DNA of 64,000 bases from IMGVR_UViG_3300031884_000002:186001-250000, one strand, 5' to 3'. Positions 23,759 to 49,573 are shown, counted from the first letter of the stretch. Numbers and translations: made by a program. Notes: generated by a model from the sequence alone, not told the origin.

Positions 23759-24624
23759 AAAATAATCTCATCATTGGTTAAAGCATCATATAATAATTGT
23801 TTTCTCTCATTGAATCTCCAAAAATTACAATCTCTTAACTCTTTAATTATATTGTTCTGTCTATCAACATCAGATTTATGTAATATTCCATTTATATCAT
23901 AATGATGAGATTCATCATATTCAAATACAATATTTTTATCTTTATCATAACCATCCAAAAAATATCCAGCAATTTTATATTCTCCTCCGTTTTCTGCATG
24001 TTGGAAATTATAATTTCCAATTTTATTTATTTTATCTATAAACTCACATGCAATTTTATTATAATTGAAAAGTTTTCCATCTTTATATTTTATATTTAAT
24101 ATATTTTGTGTAATAATTCTTCTTTTTTTTCTATATTCTTCTGAATTATGAATATTTTTCATATTATCTATATGAGATTCATTCGACCACATTTTTTTAC
24201 TATTGATTTGATGTTTTTTACGATATTCGTGAGATTCCATTATAGGCTTTATTTTTTTTCTAAAATCTGGATTTTTCCATTGTAAAATTGCTTGTTCTTT
24301 CAATTTTAATTTAGTTTCCAAAGATACCGGATGTTCTTTTAACCTTCTTGACGTGACATTACTCATTTTTTCTTTATATTCATTAGTATAGAAAAATAAT
24401 TTATTTTTTGTTTTTCCGCTCTCTTTAGTAGCACAGTTTCTACAGTTAGAATTATTTCTTGTATTTAATATTAATGATTTTTTACAAGAATATATTTGTT
24501 CTTTACCACATTTAGGACATTTTTTCGTCCATTTTTTCTCTCCAGTATTTTCGCATACGTTCTTGTCTAATTCGGTCTGAGTTTCTTTCATACCACTCTC
24601 GTTTCCATTTAAGTTCGGCTTCAT
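23749..24624 (-). CDS. Free-standing endonuclease (Zn-ribbon plus PD-(D/E)xK/EDxHD-like)
   Basis: CPKC..CRNC; FQHAENGGE..YFLDGYDKDKNIVFEYDESHHY. Confidence 0.75.
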   Translation of the reverse strand: MKPNLNGNESGMKETQTELDKNVCENTGEKKWTKKCPKCGKEQIYSCKKSLILNTRNNSNCRNCATKESGKTKNKLFFYTNEYKEKMSNVTSRRLKEHPVSLETKLKLKEQAILQWKNPDFRKKIKPIMESHEYRKKHQINSKKMWSNESHIDNMKNIHNSEEYRKKRRIITQNILNIKYKDGKLFNYNKIACEFIDKINKIGNYNFQHAENGGEYKIAGYFLDGYDKDKNIVFEYDESHHYDINGILHKSDVDRQNNIIKELRDCNFWRFNERKQLLYDALTNDEIILCQ

Positions 24625-24664
24625 ATTTTTCTTCTTTAGTTTTATATATTTTATGTCTTCCCAT
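24512..24664 (-). CDS. 50-aa basic mini-ORF overlapping the endonuclease 5' end out of frame (copy 1)
   Basis: MGRHKIYKTKEEKYEAELKWKREWYERNSDRIRQERMRKYWREKMDEKMS*; 29/44 identical to 49374..49511. Confidence 0.65.
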   Translation of the reverse strand: MGRHKIYKTKEEKYEAELKWKREWYERNSDRIRQERMRKYWREKMDEKMS

Positions 24665-24716
24665 AACTTTTTATTTTTTGTTCTACATATAAATATATAA
24701 CTCTATACAAAAAACT

Positions 24717-25031
24717 CTAACTATTTAGATTGTTGAATTGGGTTATTATAGAATTGACATTTATAGGTATTCTAAGTTGAATACCAGCCGGAACCGATAA
24801 TCGACCATTTCCCAATCCGTTATTTGCCAATGATATAATCCAATAAAGAGAATAATCATTATAATACTTATATGCCAATACATCTAAATACATAGTGTCA
24901 TTTGTGATTATTACTATATCACTATCTTGAGGAGTAACTAATGGGTATGTAACCGATGAGTATATTTGTTTTCCGTCCCATCTTATAGAAGATGAAATGT
25001 TAGAATATCGTGATGAATAATTATTTACCAT
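24717..25031 (-). CDS. LysM-like/tail-X-like baseplate protein
   Basis: LDVLAYKYYNDYSLYWIISLAN..VPAGIQLRIP. Confidence 0.75.
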   Translation of the reverse strand: MVNNYSSRYSNISSSIRWDGKQIYSSVTYPLVTPQDSDIVIITNDTMYLDVLAYKYYNDYSLYWIISLANNGLGNGRLSVPAGIQLRIPINVNSIITQFNNLNS

Positions 25032-25043
25032 ATATTATATGTA

Positions 25044-27233
25044 TTATGAAGATACCGATACAACTAAACTTTGATCCATTGGGGTTGGAGATTTTCCAAG
25101 TGGAATTGCAGTATTCCAAGCATTAGAAGTAAATACATTAGTGCGAGGAGCGTTTCCAAAATTAGCACCGCCCGCAATAGGTTGTTCTTTTTCCAATAAG
25201 TTCATAGATACTGCAATATCAACTTCTCTTGGTAATTGACCATAATTAGTCGTACTCGGAGACGTAATATAGTTTGCCAAATGAGACCACGAAACTCCGC
25301 TTTCTTGACTGGTTGTTTCCCAACTTGCATCTTCAGGAACTGTAAGATTCACCGATTTTATAATACATGGTTGATTTTTATACATATCCCCGATTGTTAT
25401 ATAATACATCGGAGGAATTATATATCTATTTGTAATGTTGTTTACTCCTTGAGTTCCTCCTGATGTATAATTTGAAGGTTTAACTGCGGTTGTTAAATAA
25501 TTAATTCTTTGCCAAGTAGGTGCCAGTTCAACTATACTATTTATTATAATTTTAAAATTAAATGATAAATCTCTGGAAAATCCGGAATAATTAAATATTT
25601 TATCGGCTCTTCCTATAAAAGAAAACTCATCATATGTAGCACTATCGTTTGCCGCCAATCCCTTTATAGTTGCTCTAAAAGGAATATATTTTTGATTTAC
25701 GATATCATAAAAGTAAAATGCTAATTGGTCATGAGTATATGGTTTCCAAGTTACATTGCTCCATCCAACCATTGGTCCAGTTCCTTTTTTATTTACATCT
25801 AATACTGTTAATGTATTGATAGCATCAAATGCCAATGAAGAAGGTAGTCGTAGGGAATTTTCTAATTGAGTTGCAATATCATCGGATACTAATTTAGTAG
25901 AGGAGTCTCTATATTCTTTTAATACCCCATATTGATAGGTTAATCCACGATTACTATCAGTTTTATTTTTTGTATTAAATAATTTATTATATCCATTTAT
26001 GGTGGTATTATTATTTTGTAATATGCTGGAATTTTGTTTAGGATTTGTATTGTATGTAGATTTCCCCGAATTTGATACAAATCCGGTATTTGTTATATCA
26101 ATCAATACAGATTGCATTAAAGTATTATACGAACTAACCGATAATGAGTCTGTTTTTTTACTTGGATAATTTTTTGATGAATCTGCATAATCGTAAAATT
26201 GATACATTATATCCGAATTTGTAAATGGACCAGAATTGGCAATATTAGAACCTACATTGTCGCCATACCTATAGCCGGATTTTAATGTATTCGTACTTTG
26301 ATTTGTATTATATCCAACCTTTCCAACTCCGCTAATACTACCATTTACTAAAGTAGATGTTAATACAATATTATTCGTAATATTTCCATTCGTATCAACC
26401 GTTACAAATAATCGAGACGCATCCACCGGATATTCTCCGTTTTTCCTAATTATAGTTGACCCAGCTACCCATTGTTGCTGAATGTCTTGTTTTATACCAT
26501 TTTTATCATTATATGACAATCTATATGTCTCATCATCTATCATCATTCCGTAGGCACCCTCACTGCTATTAAATGATATTCCTTTTTGGGATGCTGGTTT
26601 TATATTAGCTATCAATGCTGATATAAAACTTGGACCGTTTGACGAATTGTTAGTCCATTTTGATTTTAATTTATTTAATCCCGAGTTTGCAGTCTGTGCT
26701 CGCAATAATCCATGTCCATCGGTAGTTGAATTTATATTAGGAAGAGCATCTGCAATCGTTCCATTGGGTGGTTTTACATTACCCGTAGAAATACCTATTA
26801 ACGAGGTCAATGCTCCTAATAATCCACCGGATAAATCTAAATGTCTAGTTACTCTTGGAACAATATATAACGTAGCTCCACGTCCTGCCGATACTAATAC
26901 TTCAGTTGGAGAATATAATCTAGTTTCATTAAATGCATTTCCGGTTTGCATTAAAAATTGTTTTCCGAGCCATATCAATCCTTTACCCGACGTTAAAAAT
27001 TGAGCCATTCTATCAACATCTAGAAGAGATCCACCAACTGGGAATATGAACGAATCTAATTTAGTATTTGGGTATTTGTTAGATTTATCTATATAGGTAT
27101 AAACATAAGGTTCTCCATCGGATGTATGAGGATTTAATTTATGATATAATTGTATATTTACACTATCCCATACAGATTCTAATCTGCCGGGTGCGGATGG
27201 TTTAATAGTGGTTAATTGTTGAATATTTGCCAT
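25044..27233 (-). CDS. Putative baseplate/tail-tube initiator protein
   Basis: C-terminal tube-like domain (IPFRATI..FIGRAD..YSGFSRDLSFNF..PP..TIGDMY); follows tape measure. Confidence 0.6.
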   Translation of the reverse strand: MANIQQLTTIKPSAPGRLESVWDSVNIQLYHKLNPHTSDGEPYVYTYIDKSNKYPNTKLDSFIFPVGGSLLDVDRMAQFLTSGKGLIWLGKQFLMQTGNAFNETRLYSPTEVLVSAGRGATLYIVPRVTRHLDLSGGLLGALTSLIGISTGNVKPPNGTIADALPNINSTTDGHGLLRAQTANSGLNKLKSKWTNNSSNGPSFISALIANIKPASQKGISFNSSEGAYGMMIDDETYRLSYNDKNGIKQDIQQQWVAGSTIIRKNGEYPVDASRLFVTVDTNGNITNNIVLTSTLVNGSISGVGKVGYNTNQSTNTLKSGYRYGDNVGSNIANSGPFTNSDIMYQFYDYADSSKNYPSKKTDSLSVSSYNTLMQSVLIDITNTGFVSNSGKSTYNTNPKQNSSILQNNNTTINGYNKLFNTKNKTDSNRGLTYQYGVLKEYRDSSTKLVSDDIATQLENSLRLPSSLAFDAINTLTVLDVNKKGTGPMVGWSNVTWKPYTHDQLAFYFYDIVNQKYIPFRATIKGLAANDSATYDEFSFIGRADKIFNYSGFSRDLSFNFKIIINSIVELAPTWQRINYLTTAVKPSNYTSGGTQGVNNITNRYIIPPMYYITIGDMYKNQPCIIKSVNLTVPEDASWETTSQESGVSWSHLANYITSPSTTNYGQLPREVDIAVSMNLLEKEQPIAGGANFGNAPRTNVFTSNAWNTAIPLGKSPTPMDQSLVVSVSS

Positions 27234-27239
27234 ATAATT

Positions 27240-29561
27240 TTAATGATTAGTTCCATAATTTCCACTAAACTGTAGATTCCTAGACATAATACTGGATAAA
27301 CGTTGACTATCAATATTAACTCCGATTTTTCCATCATTCAAATCTTTTCGTAAATCATTGATTGCTCCTATTACTTGTTGTAATAATTTATTGGAATCTT
27401 CATTTTGATTTACTTGTTCTTTAGAATTATCAGTTTGTTGTTTAACCTCGGTAATAGCCTGTTCTTGTGTTTTCTGAGGCGCAGATGTTAATGTATCTAT
27501 ACTATGATTTATTGTAGTTGCTATTCCACCGGTTCCTGCTCGTAATCCTGCCGCAAATTTTGACATGCCCGGAATGTGATCCAATATCCAAGCAAATACA
27601 TGTCTAAACGGATAAGTTAAAGCATCATATAACATAGAGCCAACTGATACTATTCCTTTAACTATTGATAATCCTAATTGAGATGGTGATTTTCCACATA
27701 ACTTATCCCATATCCATTTAGCCGCTTTTACAAATGGATCAATTAACACATGATATAATGATTCTCCTATTGCTAATAGACCCATTAAAATCTTAGTTCC
27801 AAAGTTCATATTAGGGTCATTCCATATAGTTTTCCATCTTCCAAATAAATCAATTATAAATTGAATTGCAGTTATTACAAGTCCAATCGGACCTAATATT
27901 TTTGAGAATGCTCCAAAAAAAGTAGCAAACTTAGAACTTCCTGTAAATAATGTAAATAAAGGTTTCATATATTCTACTAACTTAGAAATCCAACCTCCTA
28001 TTTTTGAAATTATAGATAGCTTTTTGAACCATCCGACTACGTTTGATATTGTGATTTCTATTCTGGAAATGTATTTCCACATAATAGACAATTCCTTTCC
28101 GGTTTCAATAGTAGCCCATCTTGCATTTTCCAATCCAGATGATATTCGTGATATTAAAGACACCGTAGCTAAAAACATAGGTATCATCGGAATTATTGCA
28201 GGAACTATTGATAACACTCCATCTATAAAAGGTAAAAAAACAAGACCCAGTTGAGCAACTAATTGATTCCATTTTTGTTGAATTGCCACTATTCTTTCTT
28301 GGTTACTTTTAGTTTGTAAATCCAATTCAAATTGTTTAGTTTTATCTTTTAATACATTATCATTTGCTTCTTTCAACTGAGTATATGCTTTAATTTGGTT
28401 TTTGACTTCATTAGTTCCATTAAGTCGTGCATTATTCCATTCTTTATCGGCTTGCACCATATTCATCAATTCACTTACACTTCTTCCAGTTGCCTTGGCA
28501 AATGCCTCTTGTTGAAATACATCTAATTGATTAAATCTATTTTGTTTTGTTAATCTCAATATTTCTCTATTAGACTCTTCTAAGTTTCTATGATATGCCA
28601 ATTCACGGGCCTTTTGTAGATTTATAGAATGTCCCAATAAAACAGAAGCTTCCATTTCTTCTTGAACGCTTTCTGTAAAATTAAGAATATGACGAGAAGC
28701 ATCTGATACCGAGTCCATTGAAGTTCCTAATCGTCTAAACTCAATTGCCGATTTAATTGCTATAGAAGGTATTCTGGACATCAAAGATAAGGTATTACTT
28801 GATTTCGATGCTATATCTCCCATTACTTGTGATAAATTAGTTCCGGCTGCATTACTTAATGCTCCAGCCATATATGCCATACTCTTCTGGCTTTCCATTG
28901 TAGTTCCGGATAAAACTGCCATATTCTTAAAAAATCCAGCAGATATTTCTTCGGCTACTCCTAACTGAGCACTTAGTAGTGCGGTTGTTTTGACTAAATC
29001 TTCCGATGTTATGTATATACTTCCATATGCGTGTGATAATTCAATGGCAGATTTATAAACACCTTCGATGGTTACTCCCATATCCATCAATGAAATTGTG
29101 ATTGCCTGTGCGTCCCATTGAATAGTTTTAGTATTCTGCCTCAACATTCCCATCGTTTTATTAAATACAGTAACCGCTTTATCCATATCTAAAAATAATT
29201 TCCACGTCTGCTGGGCGATGTATAAAAATGGAGCGAATATGGATTCATTCATGTATTTAAGAAGAGCCATTTCTTGTTCTTCTGCTTTGATTCGTTGTTT
29301 TATGGAAGACACAATATTTTTTTGTTCTACTTCTCGTATTCCGAAATATTTTCCAAGTCCGTTTTGGGCTTCAAACTCTTCAGTTCTACTTTTATTTAAA
29401 CTTGCCGATAATTGTCCTTGTCTTTGTAACCTATTATTCCAACTCATATTGAGTTTTTCAGAAATCCCAAGCATGTCGGTAAGAGTATCGTTGCTATTTT
29501 TTAACAATTCATTATACTCCGCAAGAACTTTTGGATCTACATCTTTATTTTGGTCTGCCAT
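27240..29561 (-). CDS. Tape measure protein
   Basis: Long helical Ala/Leu-rich protein with hydrophobic segments and periodic aromatics; position in tail module. Confidence 0.75.
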   Translation of the reverse strand: MADQNKDVDPKVLAEYNELLKNSNDTLTDMLGISEKLNMSWNNRLQRQGQLSASLNKSRTEEFEAQNGLGKYFGIREVEQKNIVSSIKQRIKAEEQEMALLKYMNESIFAPFLYIAQQTWKLFLDMDKAVTVFNKTMGMLRQNTKTIQWDAQAITISLMDMGVTIEGVYKSAIELSHAYGSIYITSEDLVKTTALLSAQLGVAEEISAGFFKNMAVLSGTTMESQKSMAYMAGALSNAAGTNLSQVMGDIASKSSNTLSLMSRIPSIAIKSAIEFRRLGTSMDSVSDASRHILNFTESVQEEMEASVLLGHSINLQKARELAYHRNLEESNREILRLTKQNRFNQLDVFQQEAFAKATGRSVSELMNMVQADKEWNNARLNGTNEVKNQIKAYTQLKEANDNVLKDKTKQFELDLQTKSNQERIVAIQQKWNQLVAQLGLVFLPFIDGVLSIVPAIIPMIPMFLATVSLISRISSGLENARWATIETGKELSIMWKYISRIEITISNVVGWFKKLSIISKIGGWISKLVEYMKPLFTLFTGSSKFATFFGAFSKILGPIGLVITAIQFIIDLFGRWKTIWNDPNMNFGTKILMGLLAIGESLYHVLIDPFVKAAKWIWDKLCGKSPSQLGLSIVKGIVSVGSMLYDALTYPFRHVFAWILDHIPGMSKFAAGLRAGTGGIATTINHSIDTLTSAPQKTQEQAITEVKQQTDNSKEQVNQNEDSNKLLQQVIGAINDLRKDLNDGKIGVNIDSQRLSSIMSRNLQFSGNYGTNH

Positions 29562-29607
29562 ATAATATAAATATAGAATTATTGAGTTTTAACCGTTAAA
29601 ATAACCC

Positions 29608-29635
29608 TTGACTTTTTATATTTCTCTGATATACT
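29608..29635 (+). promoter_or_regulatory. sigma70-type promoter TTGACT-16-TATACT, 6 nt from ATG
   Basis: ttgactttttatatttctctgatatactgtaaacATG. Confidence 0.75.
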
Positions 29636-29641
29636 GTAAAC

Positions 29642-29944
29642 ATGATTGAAAAACGAGAAAATGTAATCTTCGGGTTTATCGGAGATTTGATTAAGTTTAT
29701 TGCTGAAATTATAATTCTAGCAGCCGTTACCTTTGTAGTTATATTTGCATTATTTGCACCTGCTTTTGCGCCATATTTTCGAGGACGATATATGGGTGAG
29801 TTTGGATGTGGGAATGACGATAAGCGAGTAAAATCAAAAATGGTAATGGTAAACTTTGTATTGTGGATGATTTGCATTTTCTCTTGGATTGTTTTACTTG
29901 GATATGGATTAACTCCTCCTGATGGATGTGGATTAGCTAAGTAA
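29642..29944 (+). CDS. Small two-helix membrane protein
   Basis: Two hydrophobic segments; leaderless promoter. Confidence 0.65.
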   Translation: MIEKRENVIFGFIGDLIKFIAEIIILAAVTFVVIFALFAPAFAPYFRGRYMGEFGCGNDDKRVKSKMVMVNFVLWMICIFSWIVLLGYGLTPPDGCGLAK

Positions 29945-30012
29945 AATATAATTAATTAAAAAAGTTTGGCTGGCATATATGTATATTTGTAGATTAAAAC
30001 CAGATTACATAT

Positions 30013-30834
30013 ATGCCAGATAATAATACAATATCAATAACCAGACCATCAGTGACAACTCCTATCCCCATAAAGGCGGAAGTTCCTAAGTATCCAACCG
30101 AAATTATATCATTACCAAGTCAAGGATTTCCCTATGATGAATCCAATCCATTAAGTTCAGGAACGTTAGAATTAAAAAACTTAACGGCAAAAGAGGAAAA
30201 TCTATTGACTAATCAAACATTGATGAAAAATGGAACTCTGCTTGATAAACTATTGGAATCGGTAATAGTTGATAAAACAGTAAAGACAAATGAAATGTTA
30301 ATGTGTGATTTTGATGCGGCAATATTTGCGTTAAGAAGAATGGCATATGGAGATTCTTATGAAGTTACTATTACTTGTGGAAAATGTGGAAAAGATACTC
30401 AAGTTGATATAGATTTAAGTCAAATGAAAAACTCGGAGTTAGTCGAAAGCAATTTTATAAAAGGGCAAAATAATTTTATATTTGAATTGCCATATAGTAA
30501 ACGAACTGTTACATTTAAATTATTAACCAGAAAAGATATATTTAACATAGAAAAAGAAATTGAGGCTATGAAAAAGGTTAGTAAACAGAGCACTGAAATG
30601 ACAACTCGTTTAAGTTATATAATTACTTCTATAGACGGTGAAAATGAAGTTTCTAAAATTAGAAAGTTTGTAAATGATGGTGAATTAATTTCAAAAGATA
30701 GTCTCGAATTAAGAAAATATATTAAATCAATATCTCCAACATTGGATACTACATTTGATTTTACTTGTTCCTCATGTGACTCCGAAAGAAAGCAAGAGGT
30801 GCCTATGGGTATCGGGTTTTTTTTCCCTAACTAA
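30013..30834 (+). CDS. Baseplate hub/tail assembly chaperone (T4 gp26-like)
   Basis: ISLPSQG..LTAKEENLL..CGKC..FELPYSK..CSSC..GFFFP. Confidence 0.75.
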   Translation: MPDNNTISITRPSVTTPIPIKAEVPKYPTEIISLPSQGFPYDESNPLSSGTLELKNLTAKEENLLTNQTLMKNGTLLDKLLESVIVDKTVKTNEMLMCDFDAAIFALRRMAYGDSYEVTITCGKCGKDTQVDIDLSQMKNSELVESNFIKGQNNFIFELPYSKRTVTFKLLTRKDIFNIEKEIEAMKKVSKQSTEMTTRLSYIITSIDGENEVSKIRKFVNDGELISKDSLELRKYIKSISPTLDTTFDFTCSSCDSERKQEVPMGIGFFFPN

Positions 30835-33651: not shown

Positions 33652-33653
33652 GT

Positions 33654-35121: not shown

Positions 35122-35829
35122 TTATATATAAATATACTGAAAAAATGTTTTATTCGAAAAATTATATCTCCAAAATTTTTTAGGTTTTAACGTATCAATT
35201 ATTTTTTGTTGTCTAATTTTATCTTTTTTACGTTGTGCTTCTTTATTATGATATTTACTATCATATTCCAATACCACATTATGAATTGGATCATATCCAT
35301 CTATATAAAACATATTGTTTCCTGTTTTTAATTGATAATTTAATACGAAATTAAATCCCAATTTATTCCATTTATCTATAAGTTCCTTATGTCCTTTATC
35401 CATTGCTATATTATTCCACTTACATCTATCAATCATATGTTCCCGTTTAAGTGGATTTTTCCATGCTTTTTTAACAGATTCTGATACTTTTTTCTTTGTT
35501 TCTTCACTTAATGTTGTTCCTAAATATCTATTTCTTTGTTTTAACTTCATTTCAGCCGTATGTTTTCGTCCAAACATTGGATGTTTATCCCCGCTTACCA
35601 TTTTTCCAAATTTCTCTTTATTTAGAGAAGACCAAGTTGGTTTACCTATCTCAATACAAGAATGACATAATTGACCTTTAGAGATAGAACATGACATTTC
35701 ATACATTGTGTTTGGATTCCCCGTTTTTCCTATAACTTCAGAACCACACGAAGGACACCGTTTACACCATTTTCCTTCAATGTTTTTCCAAATTTTTCCA
35801 GTCTTAATATGTTCTTGGACTTTACTCAT
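35122..35829 (-). CDS. Free-standing endonuclease (Zn-ribbon, NUMOD3-like, PD-(D/E)xK)
   Basis: CPSC..CHSC; HPMFGRKHTAE; FYIDGYDPIHNVVLEYDSKYH. Confidence 0.75.
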   Translation of the reverse strand: MSKVQEHIKTGKIWKNIEGKWCKRCPSCGSEVIGKTGNPNTMYEMSCSISKGQLCHSCIEIGKPTWSSLNKEKFGKMVSGDKHPMFGRKHTAEMKLKQRNRYLGTTLSEETKKKVSESVKKAWKNPLKREHMIDRCKWNNIAMDKGHKELIDKWNKLGFNFVLNYQLKTGNNMFYIDGYDPIHNVVLEYDSKYHNKEAQRKKDKIRQQKIIDTLKPKKFWRYNFSNKTFFQYIYI

Positions 35830-41055: not shown

Positions 41056-41075
41056 TATGTTTTTTAATTGCTCAC

Positions 41076-44000: not shown

Positions 44001-44585
44001 AGAAGTTCCAGAAACGGATAACCCGCTTCCGCTTTGAGCAACTCCTCCATTTATACTTCCCGTACCTGATAAAAATCCAGTTCCGGAAAAATATCCACTT
44101 CCACTAAAAATACCATCAACATTAGAAATACTACCGGGAGATGAAAAAGAAGCAGTATAAGGATAAGTTACGCCCGCTGTATTAAATGACATTCCAATTG
44201 GAATCTGGCCATATGCTGGAAGTGTAATATTTGAAGATTGAGATACTAAATATCCACAATCCATAGCACGAGTCCATTCTCCACTTTGAGCATAAATAAC
44301 AAATGGATATTTTTGAGTATATCCGGTTAATGCTCCAACACGACAAACAGTGACAAATCCTTTAGCCTGTAAATATTGAGTGGCAGTATAAGGACCATAA
44401 TAGGTTCCATCAGGAGTTCCAAATTGTGCCTGTAAGGTTGGAATATCGGTAAATGTAGTTGGATAAAACCCAACTCCTTGAGGAAATGGTGCCACGACAA
44501 CTGCGCCAATATCAGCAACGCCTTGAGCGATACCAGATTGGTTTATTTCGTTTATAAAAACACCGGGAGAAATCATGTTTGACAT
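41076..44585 (-). CDS. Contractile tail sheath protein (T4 gp18-like) with large insertion
   Basis: ISPGVFINE; YAGTYYPWV..WFAVAGLNRG..LYEGKVNPI..VWGQKTLQ..RISVRRLL..LFE..KPTKTAEF. Confidence 0.95.
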   Translation of the reverse strand: MSNMISPGVFINEINQSGIAQGVADIGAVVVAPFPQGVGFYPTTFTDIPTLQAQFGTPDGTYYGPYTATQYLQAKGFVTVCRVGALTGYTQKYPFVIYAQSGEWTRAMDCGYLVSQSSNITLPAYGQIPIGMSFNTAGVTYPYTASFSSPGSISNVDGIFSGSGYFSGTGFLSGTGSINGGVAQSGSGLSVSGTSTITGSLTGTGSFSGTGSFTGFYVNTVYVSGSIELNGVASSLTLQPAQGTAIAGTPGPSGSLIYYGQTAAGNINGTLLYTGAFQVSSASFFALTGSAASASILSSILFSAGLSASFDYTQGNVPLEQYPPTFYTSQIISANSSVISDSQDLGNPAVGAPDIYIMNGGVITSTDHCGNVSLIVNGCLSGSFGYLDGGFYASSGVYNTCSFQWTGAPVQKVLAVLGNTQWENLNTSTLQVPGFYGSTLSSSYGFTTASQLANLPADNFAIVLSSSLGSGYGIYNFSLVESDPHYITNVFGNNPTAGNQATYAAGTKIESAYLYNLYPSKIAEVVSQPNNWKIFGSAMPSGSTAYAGEPLNFTDANSFQPTKGDSVYSLTNAYTPWILSQQIASWNGGTPTRFNLFQVATLADGTYANQLCKIQISNVKLATQVAGSDWGSFTLTVRAFDDTDRQPVILEQYNNLTLDPTSPNYIARVIGDQYSYINFNGKIVTYGIYANVSQYIRIQMADTNYPVTAVPYGFAAYSSPLAGGIGMFVTHMAYTKASVYGLYPGKYPSGVDFAGPPNSADAELIGLYPTCSMGVDAYPDNLPYFAPVPANSVSAGKLFALDVEYTDFGVSTGSFINGSTVISASVDPVNESTYVKMRNFILGFQGGFDGQAPSIPVNVGDNIVAGNTQGLNCANSTAAGSVAYAQCIGALSNADEWDINLITTPGIIYSLHSYVTNLVVDMCETRGDVFYILDIYEDGGNPATGQITETVDLAAEFDTSYAGTYYPWVRILDTNINQIVTVPPSVVLPAVYAASDNVSAEWFAVAGLNRGGIPGAVGVTDRVINSERDTLYEGKVNPIVSFPDEGFVVWGQKTLQNASNATNRISVRRLLINIKKFFASVGKYVLFEQSNAATWNKLLAIANPYLEGVQQRSGLYAFQLVMDASNNTPALEDQNIMVCQLWIKPTKTAEFLKIPITITTTGASFPTIS

Positions 44586-44701
44586 ACGTTTATATTTTAT
44601 TTTTTAATAAAAATCTCAATATCCAACTACCAATTAAATATTGAAACTATTAAATATAAATATAACTCGTTTTCTCAAAGATATAAAAAAATATTATATT
44701 T

Positions 44702-44968
44702 TTATACTGTGGAAGATGGTGTAAAAGTTCCATCGGTTAAACTTAGATTTCCTTCGCCATAACTACTAAGAATCTTATTTAACAGGTCTTTTTCTGTTTT
44801 TTGAAGGTTAATCCATGCCGCTTCTGTTTCTTTTTCTGCGTTCTCAAGATTTAATCTCTCTACTTTAAGAGTTCCAAATCGCAATAATGTTTGCTGAATA
44901 TTAGATTGTAACTGTTTAATATCGGACATTTCCGATTCTTTTAATTTTACTGGAGTAACTTTATTCAT
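44702..44968 (-). CDS. Small coiled-coil hypothetical protein
   Basis: 88 aa; ends YGEGNLSLTDGTF. Confidence 0.6.
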   Translation of the reverse strand: MNKVTPVKLKESEMSDIKQLQSNIQQTLLRFGTLKVERLNLENAEKETEAAWINLQKTEKDLLNKILSSYGEGNLSLTDGTFTPSSTV

Positions 44969-45003
44969 GTTTATATATATTTGATTATTTTATTTTTTAT
45001 TTA

Positions 45004-45432
45004 TTATATTTTGATTTTTTCCAATGCCGACGTATCGGCATAAGTATAATATTCATCTTCAGATGTTTGTATTGTATTCCATATGGTTTCGGCTCTACCT
45101 ATTCTATGGTCCTTACCCGATACAATTCCCTTATAACGATTAGATAAACAATATTTCAATGCTGCTTGATATAATAATAGTCCAAATCCTTCTTTTTTTT
45201 GAACTGCTGATATGAAATCCACATATAAATAACCACTTTTTGGTTTTATATCCCCCAAATCATCAAAATTAGAAGTTAAAGTTATGTATCCCAATGCTTC
45301 ATTATTATCCGACAACATATCTATACTGATTGAATATTCATTATTTTTAATAGTAGAAAATTTTATTTTTCCTTCTTTATATAAAATAAATGCTAATTTT
45401 TCTTCAGTTAATAATGATTTTAACTTAATCAT
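45004..45432 (-). CDS. GNAT-like acetyltransferase with MIKLK leader
   Basis: LGYITL..YVDFISAVQKKEGFGLLLYQAAL..AETIW. Confidence 0.6.
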   Translation of the reverse strand: MIKLKSLLTEEKLAFILYKEGKIKFSTIKNNEYSISIDMLSDNNEALGYITLTSNFDDLGDIKPKSGYLYVDFISAVQKKEGFGLLLYQAALKYCLSNRYKGIVSGKDHRIGRAETIWNTIQTSEDEYYTYADTSALEKIKI

Positions 45433-46208
45433 ATAAAATATGTTTTATAGTTTATATTTTCATTTAGAGGATTGTAATTATTCCAACCTGATAGTTCATA
45501 CTGATATTTTTGCAATTTAATATTTAATTCTCGTATTTCATTTTCCATTCCTCCCATAGAGTCCAATCTTTCAATTTCACGTTCTATTTTAGGTATTTCA
45601 TATGTTAAAAATAAAAATCTTTTTTCTTTTATACTTGATAATTTAGCCTCATCTAATTTTTCTTTGGGTAAGTCGAAATGCATCTTTTCACCTTTAATTG
45701 GAGAATATACTATTTTATCAATAGTTACTTCCATGTCTACCACTGTATCTTTTTCATCGAATGAATTAGATTTAACATATGCCAATGTAAGATGGGGATG
45801 ATATATTGGATGAGAATCTTCATTGGGAAACTCACATGCTGCTTTATTTAATTTTTTAATAACATCGGATTCTACATCATATTTAACAACATCAAATCCT
45901 TTTTCTTTATTTTTGAATTGACTTATACTTTTAAGCGTAGCTTTAAATTGAATTACATCTTTGATTAAATTTTCAATTTCTTTTTTAGTAAGATCAGGAA
46001 AAAAACCATACTTTATAGTAATATGAATTTCTTCTAATTCTCTTCCCATTCCTTCTTCTTTTGTATATAAAACATCGTCTGATATTATATCTTTTCCAAT
46101 TTTAATTATTTTTTTAGAATCTTTATCACTGATGAAGCACATTAAACATCCATAATCAACGGATTTTTTTCCACGGTCTTCATTTAACATATTTTTTAAT
46201 TTAATCAT
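45429..46208 (-). CDS. 2H phosphoesterase (T4 57B/Acb1-like) with MIKLK leader and C-terminal coiled coil
   Basis: Two HxT motifs (HITIKYG, YHPHLTLAYVK); YGCLM near the N-terminus. Confidence 0.75.
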   Translation of the reverse strand: MIKLKNMLNEDRGKKSVDYGCLMCFISDKDSKKIIKIGKDIISDDVLYTKEEGMGRELEEIHITIKYGFFPDLTKKEIENLIKDVIQFKATLKSISQFKNKEKGFDVVKYDVESDVIKKLNKAACEFPNEDSHPIYHPHLTLAYVKSNSFDEKDTVVDMEVTIDKIVYSPIKGEKMHFDLPKEKLDEAKLSSIKEKRFLFLTYEIPKIEREIERLDSMGGMENEIRELNIKLQKYQYELSGWNNYNPLNENINYKTYFI

Positions 46209-46211
46209 ATA

Positions 46212-46973
46212 TCAAGAAGGGTCATATCCCCATTCAAAAATAGAATTACCATCCGTATATAAATCTTTAACAGGAACAACTTTAGATAATATTCTATATC
46301 TATCAAACTCAGTTTTACCATGTGTAACTGCATAATCTCGTATTGGAGTAACCCAATCACCTGGATTTATTTTAACTTCTGATTCTTCGGATGTCATTTT
46401 CTTTTTTATTCTTTCTTCTTCATTGCATAAATAATCATAATATTTACTTTTATCTGTAAAATATTTGACATGGGCTGGTATTTTTCCAGTTTTTAATATA
46501 TATTTCTTTTGTTTTTCAATATCTTCCAATTTTTCTTGGGAAGTCAATACCATTGGAACCGCTCGATAAACTCTTATTTTCAAGTTCGGCTTGTCTTTTA
46601 TACTCCTATAAATAGAAACTGCTAATCTATCTAATGTTTCATTGGAGCCATATCCATAAAATCTATATGCTTCAGGAGAAGTGTAAATATCGGGATATGT
46701 AGTGGTGAGATTATATACTGGGTCATCTGTTCTATCTGGAGCAGAATGATTTCCTCTATAATTTTCATCTTCGGTTAATACCGTTAATTTTCCAATCTTT
46801 TTTAAGAAATTGAGTATGGTTTCCCATGCTTTTTCAACATGACCGTTTTCCAACATCATATCAACTTCAAGTTTTAATTCGGGGTCGGCAGAATCATAGA
46901 ATAAAGTTAATTCATGAATACCAACCATTCCAGTATATATGGCTTCTTTTATTAAGTCAGTTAATTTAATCAT
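46212..46973 (-). CDS. Two-module protein with ADP-ribosyltransferase-like domain and MIKL leader
   Basis: RVYRAVP..INPGDWVT..YA..HG..EWGY resembles the ART strand pattern. Confidence 0.5.
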   Translation of the reverse strand: MIKLTDLIKEAIYTGMVGIHELTLFYDSADPELKLEVDMMLENGHVEKAWETILNFLKKIGKLTVLTEDENYRGNHSAPDRTDDPVYNLTTTYPDIYTSPEAYRFYGYGSNETLDRLAVSIYRSIKDKPNLKIRVYRAVPMVLTSQEKLEDIEKQKKYILKTGKIPAHVKYFTDKSKYYDYLCNEEERIKKKMTSEESEVKINPGDWVTPIRDYAVTHGKTEFDRYRILSKVVPVKDLYTDGNSIFEWGYDPS

Positions 46974-48418
46974 ATTTGTTTAATAAATTTCAATGGCATT
47001 TTATATCCTACGATAATAGTATAAGGAGATATACCTTCTGAATGATAATCAGACGGAATTTCTCCTAATTCTAACTCATATGATATATATTCTCTAACCA
47101 AGTGTTCGGCAACTTGAGGTTCATATTCTAAGTTTAATTCTGGTATTTTTAATTCCGATTTAAATGCCGGAAGATTTATTTCTAAACATATGTTTCCATA
47201 AGTTCCGTTTTGATATTCTTCTGGATTTACGCTTGTAAATATACCATGTGCGCTTCTATTATTTATTCCCGTTCCACCACTACCCACTAACTCTCCGTCT
47301 TGTTTAATCAATTCCCAGTTTTCTTCAGTTGTATAATGATACACTGGACTTGGATTCGATTTAAACTCTTTTAATGTGGTTTCAAGATGACCGTTATAAA
47401 TATCATCGGCACTTATATTTACTACTTGTTCTGCATCATTTGAATAAGTCCAATCTATTATATTCTTAATAACGTCGAATGATTCGTTTTCTTTGTTATA
47501 TTCTAACCAAATTATATTATTTTTTAAGTCATATAATTTTATTATTTTCTGATTAAAATATGAACTATATTCTAAATCAAATCTATTTTTTAATTTGGAA
47601 ATTTCCGATTTAGGACATTCATAATCAAAATGGTCCAGATACTCCTGCCAATCATCCCATTTATCAGAATCTTCCGGATACATCTCATCTCTTTCTAAAT
47701 CCGTTATTTCTGATAAAGATTTAGGTTTAAATTCGTCTTTTTCAATTCCTACTATTTTAATTTGTGTATTGAAAAATACAAAGCAATCAAAACTTCCATC
47801 GGAACCACCATCTGGAAGAATGGCACCATCATACCCATCTCGTTTTAATTCTCCTAAACTCATTTTTTCATATTCATCCCATCCAGCCGGATTATTTAAT
47901 GTAACTATTGCAGTTATAATATAACCCTTACTATTAGCACCTGATTCTCCTTTTACTATTTTTTCTTTGTTTGAAGTAAACCACACTATTCCGTGAGTTG
48001 ACTTTTTAATATTAAAAGTTTTAAACGGTTCTTTAGTTCCATGATAAACTGTTAATTTTCCTTTTATATTTTCTGATAATCCATGTGCTTTCATTTGTAA
48101 TTTTTGATAATTTAATTTATCATTTGAACTGATACTATTAGTTTTAGTTACATGGTAATACGGGAATCTTTTTTTAATCAATGCTTTAACTTCTTCTCTA
48201 ATATCCTCGGATGGTTGATTATACCAATAAATGGTTTGATTACTAGCATTATATCTAAAATTATATTTATCTCTATTGTAACTCCATCCATATTTATCCA
48301 ATAAATCCGAGTGACTTTCTATATTACTATCCATTATTATATTGAAATCATCATCCACACATCCCACAATGATATAAGGAGATTTAATTTCATTTAATAA
48401 TATTTTCAATTTAATCAT
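46970..48418 (-). CDS. Multidomain protein with ART-PolyVal-like domain, a second ART-like domain and MIKLK leader
   Basis: VYHGT..F..F..GIVWFT..LNNP..GYDG..VF..QIK; later VYHYT..GIFTS..YG..LEI. Confidence 0.65.
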   Translation of the reverse strand: MIKLKILLNEIKSPYIIVGCVDDDFNIIMDSNIESHSDLLDKYGWSYNRDKYNFRYNASNQTIYWYNQPSEDIREEVKALIKKRFPYYHVTKTNSISSNDKLNYQKLQMKAHGLSENIKGKLTVYHGTKEPFKTFNIKKSTHGIVWFTSNKEKIVKGESGANSKGYIITAIVTLNNPAGWDEYEKMSLGELKRDGYDGAILPDGGSDGSFDCFVFFNTQIKIVGIEKDEFKPKSLSEITDLERDEMYPEDSDKWDDWQEYLDHFDYECPKSEISKLKNRFDLEYSSYFNQKIIKLYDLKNNIIWLEYNKENESFDVIKNIIDWTYSNDAEQVVNISADDIYNGHLETTLKEFKSNPSPVYHYTTEENWELIKQDGELVGSGGTGINNRSAHGIFTSVNPEEYQNGTYGNICLEINLPAFKSELKIPELNLEYEPQVAEHLVREYISYELELGEIPSDYHSEGISPYTIIVGYKMPLKFIKQI

Positions 48419-48480
48419 AATCCCTTTGATTTTAAATATTGTTTAATCATATCCAAATATTCTGATTTAATACTATTCAT
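48415..48480 (-). CDS. 21-aa mini-ORF coupled to the next gene
   Basis: MNSIKSEYLDMIKQYLKSKGL*; TATTTATA 5 nt upstream; ATGA overlap. Confidence 0.4.
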   Translation of the reverse strand: MNSIKSEYLDMIKQYLKSKGL

Positions 48481-48496
48481 ATTTATATAAATATAT

Positions 48497-49471
48497 TTAT
48501 TTAGATATAGAATTTACTATTTGTCTAACCTTCTCAAATGATATTTTAATATTGCATAATTGTAATTTTTTAACGATTGTTCGTATGGATGCTCCCGTAT
48601 TTCTTAAAGTTATTATAGATGTTTTTTCGTAATCTGTAATAGGTCTATACTTATGATGATTTTCTTTACTTCTATAATATTTATATTTTCTGAATATATT
48701 ATTATCAATTAATATTCTTTTTATAACATCGTATCCATAATTTTTATATTTTAATTTTTTAATAGTGTTCATTAACCCATATTGCTTATAGTTTTGTATA
48801 ATTTCCATCTCATCTTTGCGTGTTACGAATTTCCATTGATGGTGTTTATCTTTACTTAATAATCCTATATGAGATATGCTTATTTTTTGTTTTGATTTTT
48901 CGGTGTGATGCTTTCCATACCAATGAGATTTTTTTCCGTTTAAAATTGGAGTGTTTGATTTTATTTTAGCAATTGTTTCTTGTGTATGATGTTTTCCATA
49001 AAATGGATTTCCTGTACCACTAAATAGTTTTTTCATTTTAAGTTTATATTCTTCAGTTGGAATGTATCCACTCGCTCCTTCTCCACCATTTGTTAAATTA
49101 CATAGTTTTATATTATTCTTTTTGGCCTTTTTTATTTCGTTTATTTCTAGTTCAAATGCTTCTTTTTCAGTAATATTCTTTTTTATAAACAATACCTTTA
49201 CATCGTGTCCTAAGTTTATTATTTTTTTTATTTTATTAAATAAATGTAAATTATTATTTGGAATTTCGTTTTTTTTAACTTTTCGGATATGTTCGTAATA
49301 TCTATATTTACACCCCTTCCCAATGTAAAATACAATATTATTTACTGGATCTATTAAATTATATACATAAAATCTATTTTCTTTCTTTCCAATACTTTTG
49401 CATACGTTTTCGTTTAATTTGCTCTGAATTTTTTCTATACCAATTTCGTTTCCATCTTCGTTCGGCTTCAT
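48497..49471 (-). CDS. GIY-YIG homing endonuclease with NUMOD3-like repeats
   Basis: FYVYNLID..FYIGKG..R..H..E..LCNLTNGGEG; NPFYGKHHT, HWYGKHHT. Confidence 0.88.
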   Translation of the reverse strand: MKPNEDGNEIGIEKIQSKLNENVCKSIGKKENRFYVYNLIDPVNNIVFYIGKGCKYRYYEHIRKVKKNEIPNNNLHLFNKIKKIINLGHDVKVLFIKKNITEKEAFELEINEIKKAKKNNIKLCNLTNGGEGASGYIPTEEYKLKMKKLFSGTGNPFYGKHHTQETIAKIKSNTPILNGKKSHWYGKHHTEKSKQKISISHIGLLSKDKHHQWKFVTRKDEMEIIQNYKQYGLMNTIKKLKYKNYGYDVIKRILIDNNIFRKYKYYRSKENHHKYRPITDYEKTSIITLRNTGASIRTIVKKLQLCNIKISFEKVRQIVNSISK

Positions 49472-49511
49472 ATTTTTCTTCTTTTGTATTGTATATTTTA
49501 TTTCTTCCCAT
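49374..49511 (-). CDS. 45-aa basic mini-ORF overlapping the GIY-YIG 5' end out of frame (copy 2)
   Basis: MGRNKIYNTKEEKYEAERRWKRNWYRKNSEQIKRKRMQKYWKERK*. Confidence 0.65.
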   Translation of the reverse strand: MGRNKIYNTKEEKYEAERRWKRNWYRKNSEQIKRKRMQKYWKERK

Positions 49512-49573
49512 AACTTTTATTAACCTTTCTACATTATAAATATATAACTACAAACATAAAACTACAAATATTT

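What the first reader, a model, noticed from the sequence alone, without database searches (positions are those of the whole stretch)
24512..49550. Same promoter plus overlapping mini-ORF module on two unrelated endonucleases
Seen: ~24530-24700 and ~49380-49550 are homologous. Each has TATTTATA, then 23 nt later a 50- or 45-aa Arg/Lys/Trp-rich ORF (29/44 identical). The nuclease frame opens 40 nt inside it at TAT GAA (ATG in the +1 frame). Homology ends where a PD-(D/E)xK nuclease (copy 1) or a GIY-YIG nuclease (copy 2) begins. Inference: a portable 5' control cassette for selfish nucleases. The mini-protein could be an inhibitor or autorepressor, could damp nuclease initiation, or could be fused to the nuclease by a +1/-2 frameshift in the A-rich junction.
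Basis: partly seen in the sequence, partly recalled or inferred. Interest (0 to 1): 0.65.

Follow-up and report, generated by a model that had tools for sequence, protein, structure and literature searches.

The report
Shared two-gene head on phage nucleases
A lake jumbo phage carries about ten mobile nuclease genes that share the same front end, a promoter plus a conserved 45-60 aa helical mini-protein gene that the nuclease gene reads through in another frame, so each short transcript most likely makes two proteins from two nearby start codons rather than one frameshift fusion.

Summary
The 354-kb lake jumbo phage holds 11 copies, and IMG/VR holds over 100 related loci.

- **Which frame codes.** The mini-ORF frame is under purifying selection. 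In 13 close pairs, 43% of differences are silent in it, against 18% in the nuclease frame.
- **The nuclease frame.** Where a nuclease follows, it is always +1 and stays stop-free across the mini-ORF (P between 2e-4 and 1e-36). It always has its own ATG, either just after the promoter box or 19-73 nt inside the mini-ORF.
- **Frameshifting.** No slippery site is conserved. In one GIY-YIG lineage the catalytic GIY strand overlaps the mini-protein's conserved C-terminal motif. A +1 frameshift fusion is therefore unlikely.
- **Mobility.** The whole unit (promoter, mini-ORF, nuclease) is missing from the same intergenic site in a related phage, so it is a free-standing homing-endonuclease cassette.
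- **Promoter.** The core box is the phage's general promoter. The phage shows no Shine-Dalgarno use, and many ATGs sit 4-8 nt after the box. A variable direct repeat is specific to the module.
- **Mini-protein.** It is an uncharacterised, basic, single-helix protein. I infer that it binds DNA or regulates the cassette.

This is a new variant of known kinds: overlapping genes and regulated homing-endonuclease cassettes.

The parts
23759..24716 (-). Copy 1 cassette: the whole inserted unit (promoter, mini-ORF, nuclease) between the stop of the 104-aa gene (24717-24719) and the ATG of the 820-aa gene (23758)
   Evidence: In related contig L092 the homologous 104-aa and 822-aa genes are 1 nt apart, with nothing between them.
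24689..24719 (-). Copy 1 promoter. W1 TAGAGTT is at 24713-24719 and overlaps the neighbouring gene's stop codon. W2 TAGAGTT is at 24699-24705. The -10-type box TATATTTAT is at 24689-24697.
   Evidence: Sequence. The direct repeat has an offset of 14 nt. The box is general in this phage.
24512..24664 (-). Copy 1 mini-ORF, 50 aa (P0001), a basic protein predicted as one long helix
   Evidence: AlphaFold2 gives a helix over residues 10-49 with pLDDT 94.6. The frame is under purifying selection.
23749..24624 (-). Copy 1 nuclease ORF, 291 aa (P0003): a disordered leader encoded in the overlap, then a Zn ribbon, a helical region and a C-terminal PD-(D/E)xK-like domain. It overlaps the mini-ORF over 24512-24624 (113 nt, +1 frame). 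Its last 10 nt overlap the start of the next gene.
49536..49568 (-). Copy 2 promoter. W1 TTTGTAGTT is at 49560-49568. W2 TTTGTAGTT is at 49546-49554. The box TATATTTAT is at 49536-49544.
49374..49511 (-). Copy 2 mini-ORF, 45 aa (P0002)
48497..49471 (-). Copy 2 nuclease ORF, 324 aa (P0004), GIY-YIG plus NUMOD3. It overlaps the mini-ORF over 49374-49471 (98 nt, +1 frame).
48415..48494 (-). 3' end of cassette 2: a second promoter box (48486-48494) and a 21-aa remnant ORF (48415-48480). The remnant is a displaced duplicate of the C-terminal end of the CCA-adding enzyme gene. Its stop overlaps the ATG of the next gene (TTATGA).

Best explanation
The two regions are the shared front end of free-standing homing-endonuclease cassettes in a jumbo myophage from lake water.

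**Parts of a cassette**
1. A sigma-70-like promoter. Its -10-type box, TATATTTAT, is the phage's general one. A variable 5-11-nt word W is repeated 14-15 nt apart, at the -35 position and just upstream of the box.
2. A conserved gene for a 44-60 aa basic protein, predicted as one long helix after an N-terminal MGRKK arm.
3. A nuclease ORF with its own ATG very near the 5' end of the transcript. That ATG lies 4-6 nt after the box, upstream of the mini-ORF ATG, or 19-73 nt inside the mini-ORF. In the two window copies it is at +40.

**How it is read**
- The nuclease ORF reads through the mini-ORF in the +1 frame. A stretch of 100-160 nt is therefore dual-coding.
- The overlap-encoded nuclease N-terminus is a poorly conserved, disordered leader.
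- Different nuclease domains are joined behind it: GIY-YIG, Zn-ribbon/PD-(D/E)xK-like, and HNH-like.

**Shown**
- The module is a family.
- The mini-ORF frame is under protein-level selection.
- The nuclease frame is kept stop-free and carries an ATG.
- The cassette is an insertion.
- The phage shows no Shine-Dalgarno signal.
- The 5' RNA has no significant predicted structure.

**Inferred**
- Two proteins are made from two competing 5'-proximal starts on one short, A-rich, unstructured transcript.
- Ribosomes on one frame occlude the other start, which sets a low nuclease dose.
- The mini-protein is a small DNA-binding regulator, most likely acting on the W-W repeat of its own promoter.
For: **The module is a family**
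- There are 9 copies by tblastn and 11 by profile in the 353,772-bp genome.
- Eighty loci were fetched of the 102 in IMG/VR, and 63 of them are distinct.
- A representative library gave 274 hits. Almost all are stand-alone proteins of 44-96 aa with the domain at residues 1-44.

**The mini-ORF frame (f0) is the selected frame**
- Codon position 3 is the most variable in both classes of loci.
- In 13 close pairs there are 447 nt differences. Of these, 191 are silent in f0 and 79 are silent in f1.
- Amino-acid identity is 70% in f0 and 49% in f1.

**The nuclease frame (f1) is held open**
- 29 distinct loci with a nuclease in f1 have no f1 stop from nt 25 to nt 132 of the mini-ORF.
- The mean chance probability of that is 0.17 per locus (over the 33 distinct loci that lack an f1 stop), given the protein sequence and the genome's codon usage.
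- The summed log10 probability over those 33 loci is -36. It is -3.6 if only the most permissive member of each of 7 clusters of the 29 is counted.
- The 30 loci whose downstream gene starts at the end of the mini-ORF carry on average 1.7 f1 stops in the same stretch.

**The nuclease has its own start**
- An f1 ATG is present in every such locus.
- In loci L039, L072, L080, L083 and L085 the GIY strand (CCGIYGL) is encoded over the mini-protein's RM.RY motif. A fusion after the mini-domain is therefore impossible there.
- No shift site is common to the junctions.
- The AlphaFold2 model of P0003 has a low-confidence N-terminus (pLDDT below 50 for residues 1-16; means of 40, 47 and 62 for the first three blocks of ten residues). 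Confidence is high from the Zn ribbon onward.
- The 5' 146 nt of both mRNAs fold no better than shuffles, with z-scores of -0.86 and 0.07.

**Phage context**
- Shine-Dalgarno-like words occur in 4% of starts against a 5.5% background.
- The box lies 4-8 nt before the ATG of about 32 of 301 long ORFs.

**The cassette is an insertion**
- The empty site is seen in L092. Relative L105 has no cassette at the copy 2 position.

**The W-W repeat is specific to the module**
- Exact repeats of 5-11 nt occur in most modules. In 45 control promoters the repeats are mostly 3-5 nt.

**The sequence is sound**
- It is identical in contigs of two further runs.
Against: - **No expression data.** No RNA run holds this phage. 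Transcription starts, use of either ATG, and the existence of the mini-protein all remain unmeasured.
- **In-frame fusions exist.** A mini-domain fused in frame to a nuclease occurs in nature. P0086 has the mini-domain, two further mini-like repeats and an HNH-like domain on contigs up to 101 kb. P0077 is another case.
- **Mini-like repeats in the nuclease frame.** Two of this genome's HNH-type nucleases (C1:152134 and C1:271431) carry mini-like YY..NKEKI repeats in f1 directly after the junction. That reads naturally as one protein split by a shift.
- **Chance ATGs.** An ATG in an A-rich +1 frame is fairly likely by chance, so its presence is weak evidence on its own.
- **Mini-protein function is weakly grounded.** The DNA-binding or autoregulator role rests only on composition, the predicted helix, a 0.89 feature-similarity lead to an AT_hook-containing cluster, and the W-W repeat.
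- **W and the mini-protein are inherited together.** Their correlation therefore does not show binding.
Confidence: 0.6

Rival explanations
1. Programmed +1 ribosomal frameshifting, or transcriptional slippage, at the A-rich end of the mini-ORF fuses the mini-domain to the nuclease. The mini-domain would then be the nuclease's N-terminal DNA-binding module.
For: - The downstream nuclease is in the +1 frame in every nuclease-linked locus and never in -1.
- Junctions are A-rich, for example AACAAAAAAAAGTGG at C1:120580 and GAAAAAATGG in copy 1.
- In-frame natural versions exist: P0086, P0077 and L082/L084. The L082 junction YWKKWTKKCPDCG matches the product predicted for a shift at GAA AAA A|TGG in copy 1.
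- Two GIY-YIG copies (C1:73675, C1:120580) have no ATG between the mini-ORF start and the GIY motif.
Against: - A shift at the end of the mini-ORF gives no reason for f1 to be stop-free across the whole mini-ORF, yet it is.
- Every locus has an f1 ATG. The two GIY-YIG copies without an internal one have it 5-6 nt after the promoter box.
- No shift motif is conserved. Copy 2, L039 and L076 have no A-run at the junction.
- In the CCGIYGL lineage the GIY strand overlaps the conserved end of the mini-domain.
- L082/L084 is a 114-aa deletion remnant, and P0077 lacks the GIY strand. Two of the three in-frame cases therefore look degenerate.
- In one copy (C1:182311) the nuclease is in the other frame, with an ATGA stop-start overlap.
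Confidence: 0.08
2. The association is positional, not functional. The mini-gene is an ordinary small phage gene whose 3' end or neighbourhood is a favoured landing site for homing endonucleases, so different nucleases pile up behind it.
For: - In marine phage contigs the mini-ORF is an ordinary operon gene without the module promoter. It lies directly before a DnaB-type helicase, or before DNA-methylase genes that sit at that same position.
- A solo 91-aa paralogue exists in this genome.
- Three or more unrelated nuclease folds follow it.
Against: - At the empty site of L092 the mini-ORF is absent along with the nuclease. It therefore travels with the cassette rather than waiting as a target.
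- This genome holds 10 nuclease-linked copies at unrelated sites, each with the same W-W promoter architecture.
- The f1 frame is kept open by codon choice through the mini-ORF. That implies co-adaptation, not mere adjacency.
Confidence: 0.12
3. The mini-ORF acts only in cis, as an upstream or leader ORF. Its translation controls the nuclease start, and the peptide itself has no function.
For: - The mini-ORF is short, lies at the 5' end and overlaps the nuclease start.
- In loci with short overlaps the downstream ATG lies within its last 11-35 nt, and once as ATGA. These are classical coupling layouts.
- T4 homing endonuclease genes also overlap upstream ORFs (PMC2988022).
Against: - Conservation at the amino-acid level is strong. 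R3 and Y40 are invariant and G2 and Y25 nearly invariant across 92 sequences. Silent changes predominate.
- The family persists as stand-alone genes, as in-frame domains, and in fungal-looking proteins.
- The structure prediction is confident.
Confidence: 0.08
4. The mini-protein is a direct protein inhibitor or immunity factor of the nuclease, antitoxin-like.
For: - The two genes are tightly co-encoded and co-transcribed.
- The nuclease is potentially toxic.
Against: - The same mini-protein family precedes at least three unrelated catalytic folds, as well as methylases and a helicase. A shared protein-protein interface is therefore unlikely.
- About half of the nuclease-like ORFs of this phage do without it.
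Confidence: 0.04

Closest known systems
Free-standing homing endonuclease genes of T4-like phages (seg, mob) and their regulation
   Same: - They are intergenic insertions between conserved genes that carry GIY-YIG or HNH nucleases.
- Some have their own promoters.
- Several ORFs overlap the upstream ORF (mobE by 1 nt, segC by 20 bp). The review reads this as coupling that limits nuclease translation.
- I-TevI represses its own promoter (PMC2988022, read).
   Different: - Here the overlapped upstream ORF is not a host-phage gene. It is a conserved mini-gene that travels inside the cassette.
- The overlap is 100-160 nt and dual-coding.
- No Shine-Dalgarno sequence or RBS-sequestering hairpin is involved.
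- Any autorepression would be by a separate small protein, not by the nuclease.
Out-of-frame HNH endonuclease ORFs hidden inside phage DNA-methylase genes (ShiLan-type insertions; PMC11855218)
   Same: A homing nuclease ORF overlaps another open reading frame out of frame in a phage. How the nuclease gets translated is an open question there too.
   Different: - There the nuclease ORF lies inside a large host gene that stays open through the insertion.
- Here a small conserved ORF lies over the 5' leader of the nuclease ORF, and the pair has its own promoter.
Embedded or overprinted phage gene pairs such as lambda Rz/Rz1 and the phiX174 overlapping genes (from general knowledge, not tested here)
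   Same: Two proteins are read from one DNA stretch in different frames, each with its own start.
   Different: - In those pairs both products are functional over the overlap.
- Here only the mini-ORF frame shows amino-acid constraint. The nuclease frame is merely kept open.
Programmed +1 frameshift genes (prfB/RF2 type; from general knowledge)
   Same: A short 0-frame ORF ends soon after a long +1 ORF opens.
   Different: - No shift site is conserved.
- The +1 frame is open and carries an ATG far upstream of the junction.

Membership tests
Free-standing homing endonuclease cassette | Encodes a nuclease of a recognised homing-endonuclease family | tested here: met
   Copy 2 hits LEM-3_GIY-YIG at 41 bits (cut-off 27) and NUMOD3 at 65 bits. 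Copy 1 relatives carry NUMOD3 in 13 of 31 cases.
Free-standing homing endonuclease cassette | Presence/absence polymorphism at an intergenic site between conserved genes of related phages | tested here: met
   In L092 the flanking genes are 1 nt apart, whereas the window has 958 nt between them. L105 lacks cassette 2.
Free-standing homing endonuclease cassette | The nuclease cleaves the cassette-less allele and drives gene conversion | not testable with these tools
   This needs a cleavage assay and a co-infection assay.
PD-(D/E)xK nuclease (copy 1) | Significant match of the C-terminal domain to a PD-(D/E)xK family or fold | tested here: inconclusive
   P0003 itself has no Pfam hit. Among 31 relatives, 3 hit DUF559, 2 hit MTES_1575 and 2 hit RAP. 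The PDB profile search found nothing. The best Foldseek E-value is 0.025, to RAP-domain chains, and the other weak hits are Hjc, Vsr, AbaSI and Cas4-like. H209, E215, D224, D227, E235, E238, H241 and D252 are invariant.
Programmed +1 ribosomal frameshift | A conserved shift-prone site at the 0/+1 junction | tested here: not met
   Junctions differ. Several have no A-run, and in one lineage the GIY strand precedes the end of the mini-domain.
Programmed +1 ribosomal frameshift | The +1 ORF lacks an initiation codon of its own | tested here: not met
   An f1 ATG is present in all 31 nuclease-linked loci examined.
Overlapping (dual-coding) gene pair | Both frames stay open over the overlap beyond chance | tested here: met
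   The mini-ORF is intact in 63 of 63 distinct loci. The f1 frame is open with P between 2e-4 and 1e-36.
Overlapping (dual-coding) gene pair | Amino-acid-level selection in both frames | tested here: not met
   The mini-ORF frame is constrained. The nuclease frame is only 49% identical and only 18% of differences are silent in it. The excess of variation at codon position 3 is somewhat lower than in loci without the overlap.
AT-hook DNA-binding motif (mini-protein N-terminus) | GRP core flanked by basic residues | tested here: not met
   The window copies read MGRHK and MGRNK, and most others read MGRKK. A GRPK core occurs only in fungal-looking relatives. Pfam gives no hit. The Atlas lead scores 0.89, below its 0.9 mark.
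Leaderless mRNA | Transcription starts at or within a few nt of the start codon | not testable with these tools
   This is inferred only from the 4-8 nt spacing between box and ATG. No RNA data exist.

The most novel reading that the evidence does not exclude
Homing-endonuclease cassettes of Shine-Dalgarno-less jumbo phages carry a self-contained dosage switch. A cassette-encoded, single-helix DNA-binding mini-protein recognises the cassette-specific W-W repeat in its own promoter. Its ORF is also overprinted on the nuclease's leader, so the two 5'-proximal starts compete. The same front end can then be recombined onto any nuclease domain. The mini-protein would be a new family of small sequence-specific regulators, with relatives fused as repeat arrays in HNH enzymes and present in fungal proteins.
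Probability: 0.25. Interest if true: 0.7.

Novelty: new variant of a known kind. Interest (0 to 1): 0.55.

Why it matters
- **A shared expression module.** If the reading holds, selfish nucleases in a large, uncultured group of freshwater jumbo phages share one exchangeable module that solves expression and dose control. In T4 the same problem is solved with late promoters, RBS hairpins and autorepression by the nuclease itself.
- **A natural dual-coding system.** It is a compact case of start-codon competition on A-rich, Shine-Dalgarno-less, possibly leaderless transcripts.
- **An uncharacterised protein family.** The mini-protein has hundreds of members and a confident, simple fold prediction, but no Pfam, NCBIfam or PDB relative and only a function-unknown PHROG match. 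It is easy to test.
- **A point for annotators.** Gene callers report either the mini-ORF or the long ORF, and may misread the pair as a frameshifted pseudogene.

Tried and rejected
- **Family and structure searches for the mini-protein.** Pfam, PHROGs and NCBIfam gave nothing meaningful. The exception is phrog_17714 (unknown function), matched by 12 of 92 members. A profile search of the PDB gave only a chance hit at E 0.89.
- **Search of GenBank phages.** tblastn with two mini-proteins found no match. BLAST's low-complexity filter may have masked these Lys/Arg/Glu-rich queries, so this says little.
- **Mini-like repeats in the HNH nucleases.** I tested whether the repeats in the N-terminal half of the HNH-type nucleases match the mini-protein profile. 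The alignments are visible but not significant (best i-E 0.02 in a 10-sequence database).
- **Expression data.** No RNA run holds the phage. Start sites, slippage and expression could not be read.
- **Homodimer prediction.** Complex prediction on two copies of the mini-protein scored 0.00 and returned no verdict. This is not evidence either way.
- **RNA structure at the 5' end.** I looked for a T4-style hairpin hiding a start codon and found none.
- **An early shift in the A-run.** I considered a shift at codons 3-5 (AGA AAA AAA) as the reason f1 is open. I rejected it because several loci have an f1 stop directly after that run.
- **W-W as a target-site duplication.** The empty site of L092 does not contain W, so this is not supported.

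No alternative genetic code was used. The single read-laying run used 1,101 bases.
Full report
**1. What is at the coordinates**

The genes of the finding lie on the minus strand. In copy 1 the box TATATTTAT is at window 24689-24697. A 50-aa ORF (24512-24664, MGRHKIYKTKEEKYEAELKWKREWYERNSDRIRQERMRKYWREKMDEKMS) follows 24 nt later. A 291-aa ORF (23749-24624) has its ATG 40 nt inside the small ORF, in the +1 frame.

Copy 2 has the same layout. The box is at 49536-49544, the 45-aa ORF at 49374-49511, and the 324-aa ORF at 48497-49471. The two DNA stretches align from upstream of the box to the end of the small ORF and then diverge. The small proteins are 29/44 identical.

Copy 2 is a GIY-YIG/NUMOD3 enzyme. 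Copy 1 has a CxxC...CxxC zinc ribbon, a helical middle part and a compact C-terminal domain. Its relatives carry NUMOD3 (13 of 31) and, weakly, DUF559, MTES_1575 or RAP. The best structural matches are all PD-(D/E)xK-type but none is significant. Only the fold label of copy 1 remains soft.

**2. The genome**

The window is C1:186001-250000 of a 353,772-bp, 30.5% G+C virus record. It encodes a tail sheath, a DnaB-type helicase, a gp32-like protein, a RecA-like protein and a T4-type baseplate protein, so it is a jumbo myophage. Identical DNA is held by 16 or more lake-water metagenome runs. None of them is an RNA run. Contigs of two further runs, one filed under a separate 2023 study, cover the copy 1 module without a single difference or indel. 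The frame arrangement is therefore not an assembly error.

Shine-Dalgarno-like words are not enriched before long ORFs (4% against a 5.5% background). G is depleted there, and position -1 is T in 74% of starts. The box TATA(T/C)TTAT lies 4-8 nt before the ATG of about 32 of 301 long ORFs, including structural genes. Some boxes have TTGACA 17 nt upstream. The core "promoter" in the finding is therefore the phage's general promoter. Many genes probably have leaderless or near-leaderless transcripts. That is an inference from spacing, not a measurement.

**3. The small ORF is a family**

A tblastn search finds 9 copies in the genome, and a profile search finds 11.
- Seven precede an intact nuclease ORF that overlaps them deeply in the +1 frame. 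These are three GIY-YIG, one Zn-ribbon/PD-like, two with an HNH-like C-terminal domain (WH.DH...NLQPLW) behind YY..NKEKI repeats, and one HNH.
- One precedes a decayed nuclease.
- One has a short overlap.
- One ends in TTATGA, which overlaps the ATG of a GIY-YIG gene in the other frame.
- One is a solo 91-aa gene.

IMG/VR holds 102 related loci. Eighty were fetched and 63 are distinct. They fall into two groups.
- In about half, the downstream ORF is again in the +1 frame with deep overlap. Every one of these matches one of this genome's nuclease families.
- In the rest, the next gene has its own ATG within the last 11-35 nt of the small ORF. Some of these have the same promoter architecture, before DUF723/zinc-finger, HTH or DUF7487 proteins. 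A marine group has no module promoter, and there the small ORF is an ordinary operon gene before a DnaB-type helicase or N6/N4 DNA methylases.

A search of 1.84 billion representative proteins gives 274 hits. Nearly all are stand-alone proteins of 44-96 aa. There are a few in-frame fusions and a few fungal-looking proteins with two tandem GRPK(I/L)Y...NRAKS.R.Y units. No Pfam, NCBIfam or PDB family matches. One PHROG of unknown function matches 12 of 92 members.

**4. Which frame is selected**

In both groups of loci the third codon position of the small ORF is the most variable and the second the least. In 13 close pairs there are 447 nucleotide differences. Of these, 191 are silent in the small-ORF frame and only 79 are silent in the nuclease frame. 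Amino-acid identity is 70% against 49%.

The nuclease frame is nevertheless held open. Given each small protein's sequence and the genome's codon usage, the chance that the +1 frame has no stop between nt 25 and 132 averages 0.17 per locus. Yet all 29 nuclease-linked distinct loci are open. The summed log10 probability is -36 over the 33 distinct loci without an f1 stop if they are treated as independent. It is -3.6 if only the most permissive member of each of 7 clusters of the 29 is counted. The 30 loci whose next gene starts at the end of the small ORF carry on average 1.7 stops in that frame. The third-position excess is also lower in the overlap group (0.41-0.48 against 0.49-0.60). That fits an added constraint.

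**5. How the nuclease is made**

Every nuclease-linked locus has an ATG in the nuclease frame.
- In some it lies 4-6 nt after the box, upstream of the small ORF's ATG. Five copies of this genome, which begin MN..., are of this kind.
- In the others it lies 19-73 nt inside the small ORF. Position +40 recurs in unrelated lineages through different codon pairs.
- The two GIY-YIG copies that first suggested a frameshift, because they have no ATG between the small ORF's start and KSGIY, have such a box-proximal ATG.

No shift-prone motif is shared by the junctions. In the lineage L039/L072/L080/L083/L085 the catalytic GIY strand (CCGIYGL) is encoded over the small protein's conserved RM.RY motif. 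That excludes a fusion behind the mini-domain there.

In the AlphaFold2 model of the copy 1 nuclease the N-terminus is of low confidence. pLDDT is below 50 for residues 1-16, and the first three blocks of ten residues average 40, 47 and 62. Confidence is high from the zinc ribbon onward. The first 146 nt of both transcripts fold no better than shuffled sequence.

The simplest reading is two proteins from two start codons close to the 5' end of one short, A-rich, unstructured transcript. Whichever frame is being translated occludes the other start. This last step is inference.

**6. The unit is mobile**

In the related contig L092 the homologues of the 104-aa and 820-aa genes that flank copy 1 are separated by one nucleotide. 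In the window 958 nt (23759-24716) lie between them. That is exactly promoter, small ORF and nuclease. The first W word overlaps the upstream stop codon, and the nuclease's last 10 nt overlap the downstream ATG.

At copy 2, a relative (L105) has no cassette before the homologue of the 482-aa gene. The CCA-adding-enzyme gene that the cassette abuts ends colinearly with its homologue. A second, better-conserved copy of that C-terminal peptide (MNSIKSEYLDMIKQYLKSKGL*) sits behind the nuclease. It is preceded by another promoter box, and its stop overlaps the next gene's ATG. The insertion thus duplicated the invaded gene's end and appears to restore expression of the downstream gene.

The genome has about 23 nuclease-like ORFs. 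Roughly half begin directly after a promoter box without any small ORF.

**7. The small protein and the W-W repeat**

AlphaFold2, run with 92 homologues, predicts an extended N-terminal arm (MGRKKIY.T) followed by one helix over residues 10-49, with mean pLDDT 94.6. The invariant or nearly invariant positions are M1, G2, R3, Y25 and Y40. The nearest named Atlas cluster contains AT_hook in 14% of its members, at a score of 0.89. That is a lead only. A homodimer test gave no verdict.

Upstream, most modules carry an exact direct repeat of 5-11 nt with an offset of 14-15 nt. The layout is W, then TTTTAT(G)TT, then W, then the box. The first W sits at the -35 position. W differs between modules but its two copies agree within a module. 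In 45 other promoters of the phage the longest such repeat is mostly 3-5 nt. That pattern is what an operator for a module-specific DNA-binding protein would look like. However, W and the small protein are inherited together, so the correlation I see between W classes and residues 13-23 does not prove recognition.

An in-frame natural version (P0086) has the mini-domain, two further mini-like units and the HNH-like domain. It sits on contigs up to 101 kb, directly behind TATAAT-N5-ATG. This shows that the domain can work as part of a nuclease. It is the main reason I keep a frameshift or split-domain reading alive at low probability.

**8. Comparison with what is known**

T4-type free-standing homing endonuclease genes share several features with these cassettes: the intergenic insertion, occasional own promoters, overlaps with the upstream ORF that are read as dose-limiting coupling, and autorepression by I-TevI (PMC2988022). 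Out-of-frame HNH ORFs hidden inside phage methylase genes are the closest published overlap case (PMC11855218).

Three things are different here. A conserved mini-gene belongs to the cassette itself. The overlap is long and dual-coding, with only one frame constrained at the amino-acid level. The context lacks Shine-Dalgarno sequences and is box-proximal. I found no paper that describes this module.

**9. Verdict**

I class it as a new variant of known kinds. The function of the mini-protein is the open and testable part.

Noticed in passing
window 6290-8552 (-), and 5272-6270 (-): The ribonucleotide reductase gene is in two ORFs. ORF 7269-8552 ends in the N-terminal half of an intein splicing domain. 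ORF 6290-7138 begins with the C-terminal half. About 130 nt lie between them, which looks like a split intein or 'fractured gene'. The next ORF (5272-6270) has a DUF559/MTES_1575-type nuclease domain.
   Followed up: partly
window 14581-15858 (-): The RecA-like protein carries an intein splicing domain near its N-terminus (residues 19-78, 35.8 bits, at the Pfam cut-off).
   Followed up: no
window 46970-51127 and genome C1:231432-273577: Six otherwise unrelated genes begin with MIKLK.(L/M)L.E. Among them are the CCA-adding enzyme and the 482-aa gene on either side of cassette 2. Their neighbours in relative L105 begin the same way. I did not determine whether this is a shared N-terminal signal or a favoured initiation region.
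   Followed up: partly
window 48415-48494 (-): Behind the copy 2 nuclease lie a second promoter box and a 21-aa remnant that duplicates the C-terminal peptide of the CCA-adding enzyme. The remnant's stop overlaps the next gene's ATG. The cassette insertion duplicated about 45 nt of the invaded gene.
   Followed up: yes
whole genome G000: - Shine-Dalgarno words are not enriched before starts.
- Position -1 is T in 74% of starts.
- The promoter box lies 4-8 nt before about 32 of 301 long ORFs.

This suggests widespread leaderless-type starts and a host without Shine-Dalgarno use. I infer a Bacteroidota-like host but did not test it.
   Followed up: partly
whole genome G000; in the window for example 35122-35829 (-): The genome has about 23 nuclease-like ORFs related to the cassette nucleases. 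Roughly half have no mini-ORF and start directly after a promoter box.
   Followed up: partly
genome C1:135275-135502 (-); loci L082/L084: These are decayed cassettes. The mini-ORF is intact, but the Zn-ribbon nuclease is cut to 75 aa, or collapsed by internal deletion into a 114-aa in-frame remnant that keeps only the first zinc knuckle and the C-terminal ...FFRYNE... end.
   Followed up: partly
proteins P0081, P0120, P0156, P0157, P0186: These are G+C-rich, fungal-looking proteins that carry one or two tandem units, GRPK(I/L)Y.T.EE...ANRAKS.R.Y..NK, matching the mini-protein profile. Their origin and function are unknown.
   Followed up: no
window 19903-21252 (-): This 449-aa ORF matches only the C-terminal part of a DNA-polymerase PHROG (profile positions 947-1210 of 1445). 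The polymerase may be split into several ORFs in this element-rich region.
   Followed up: no
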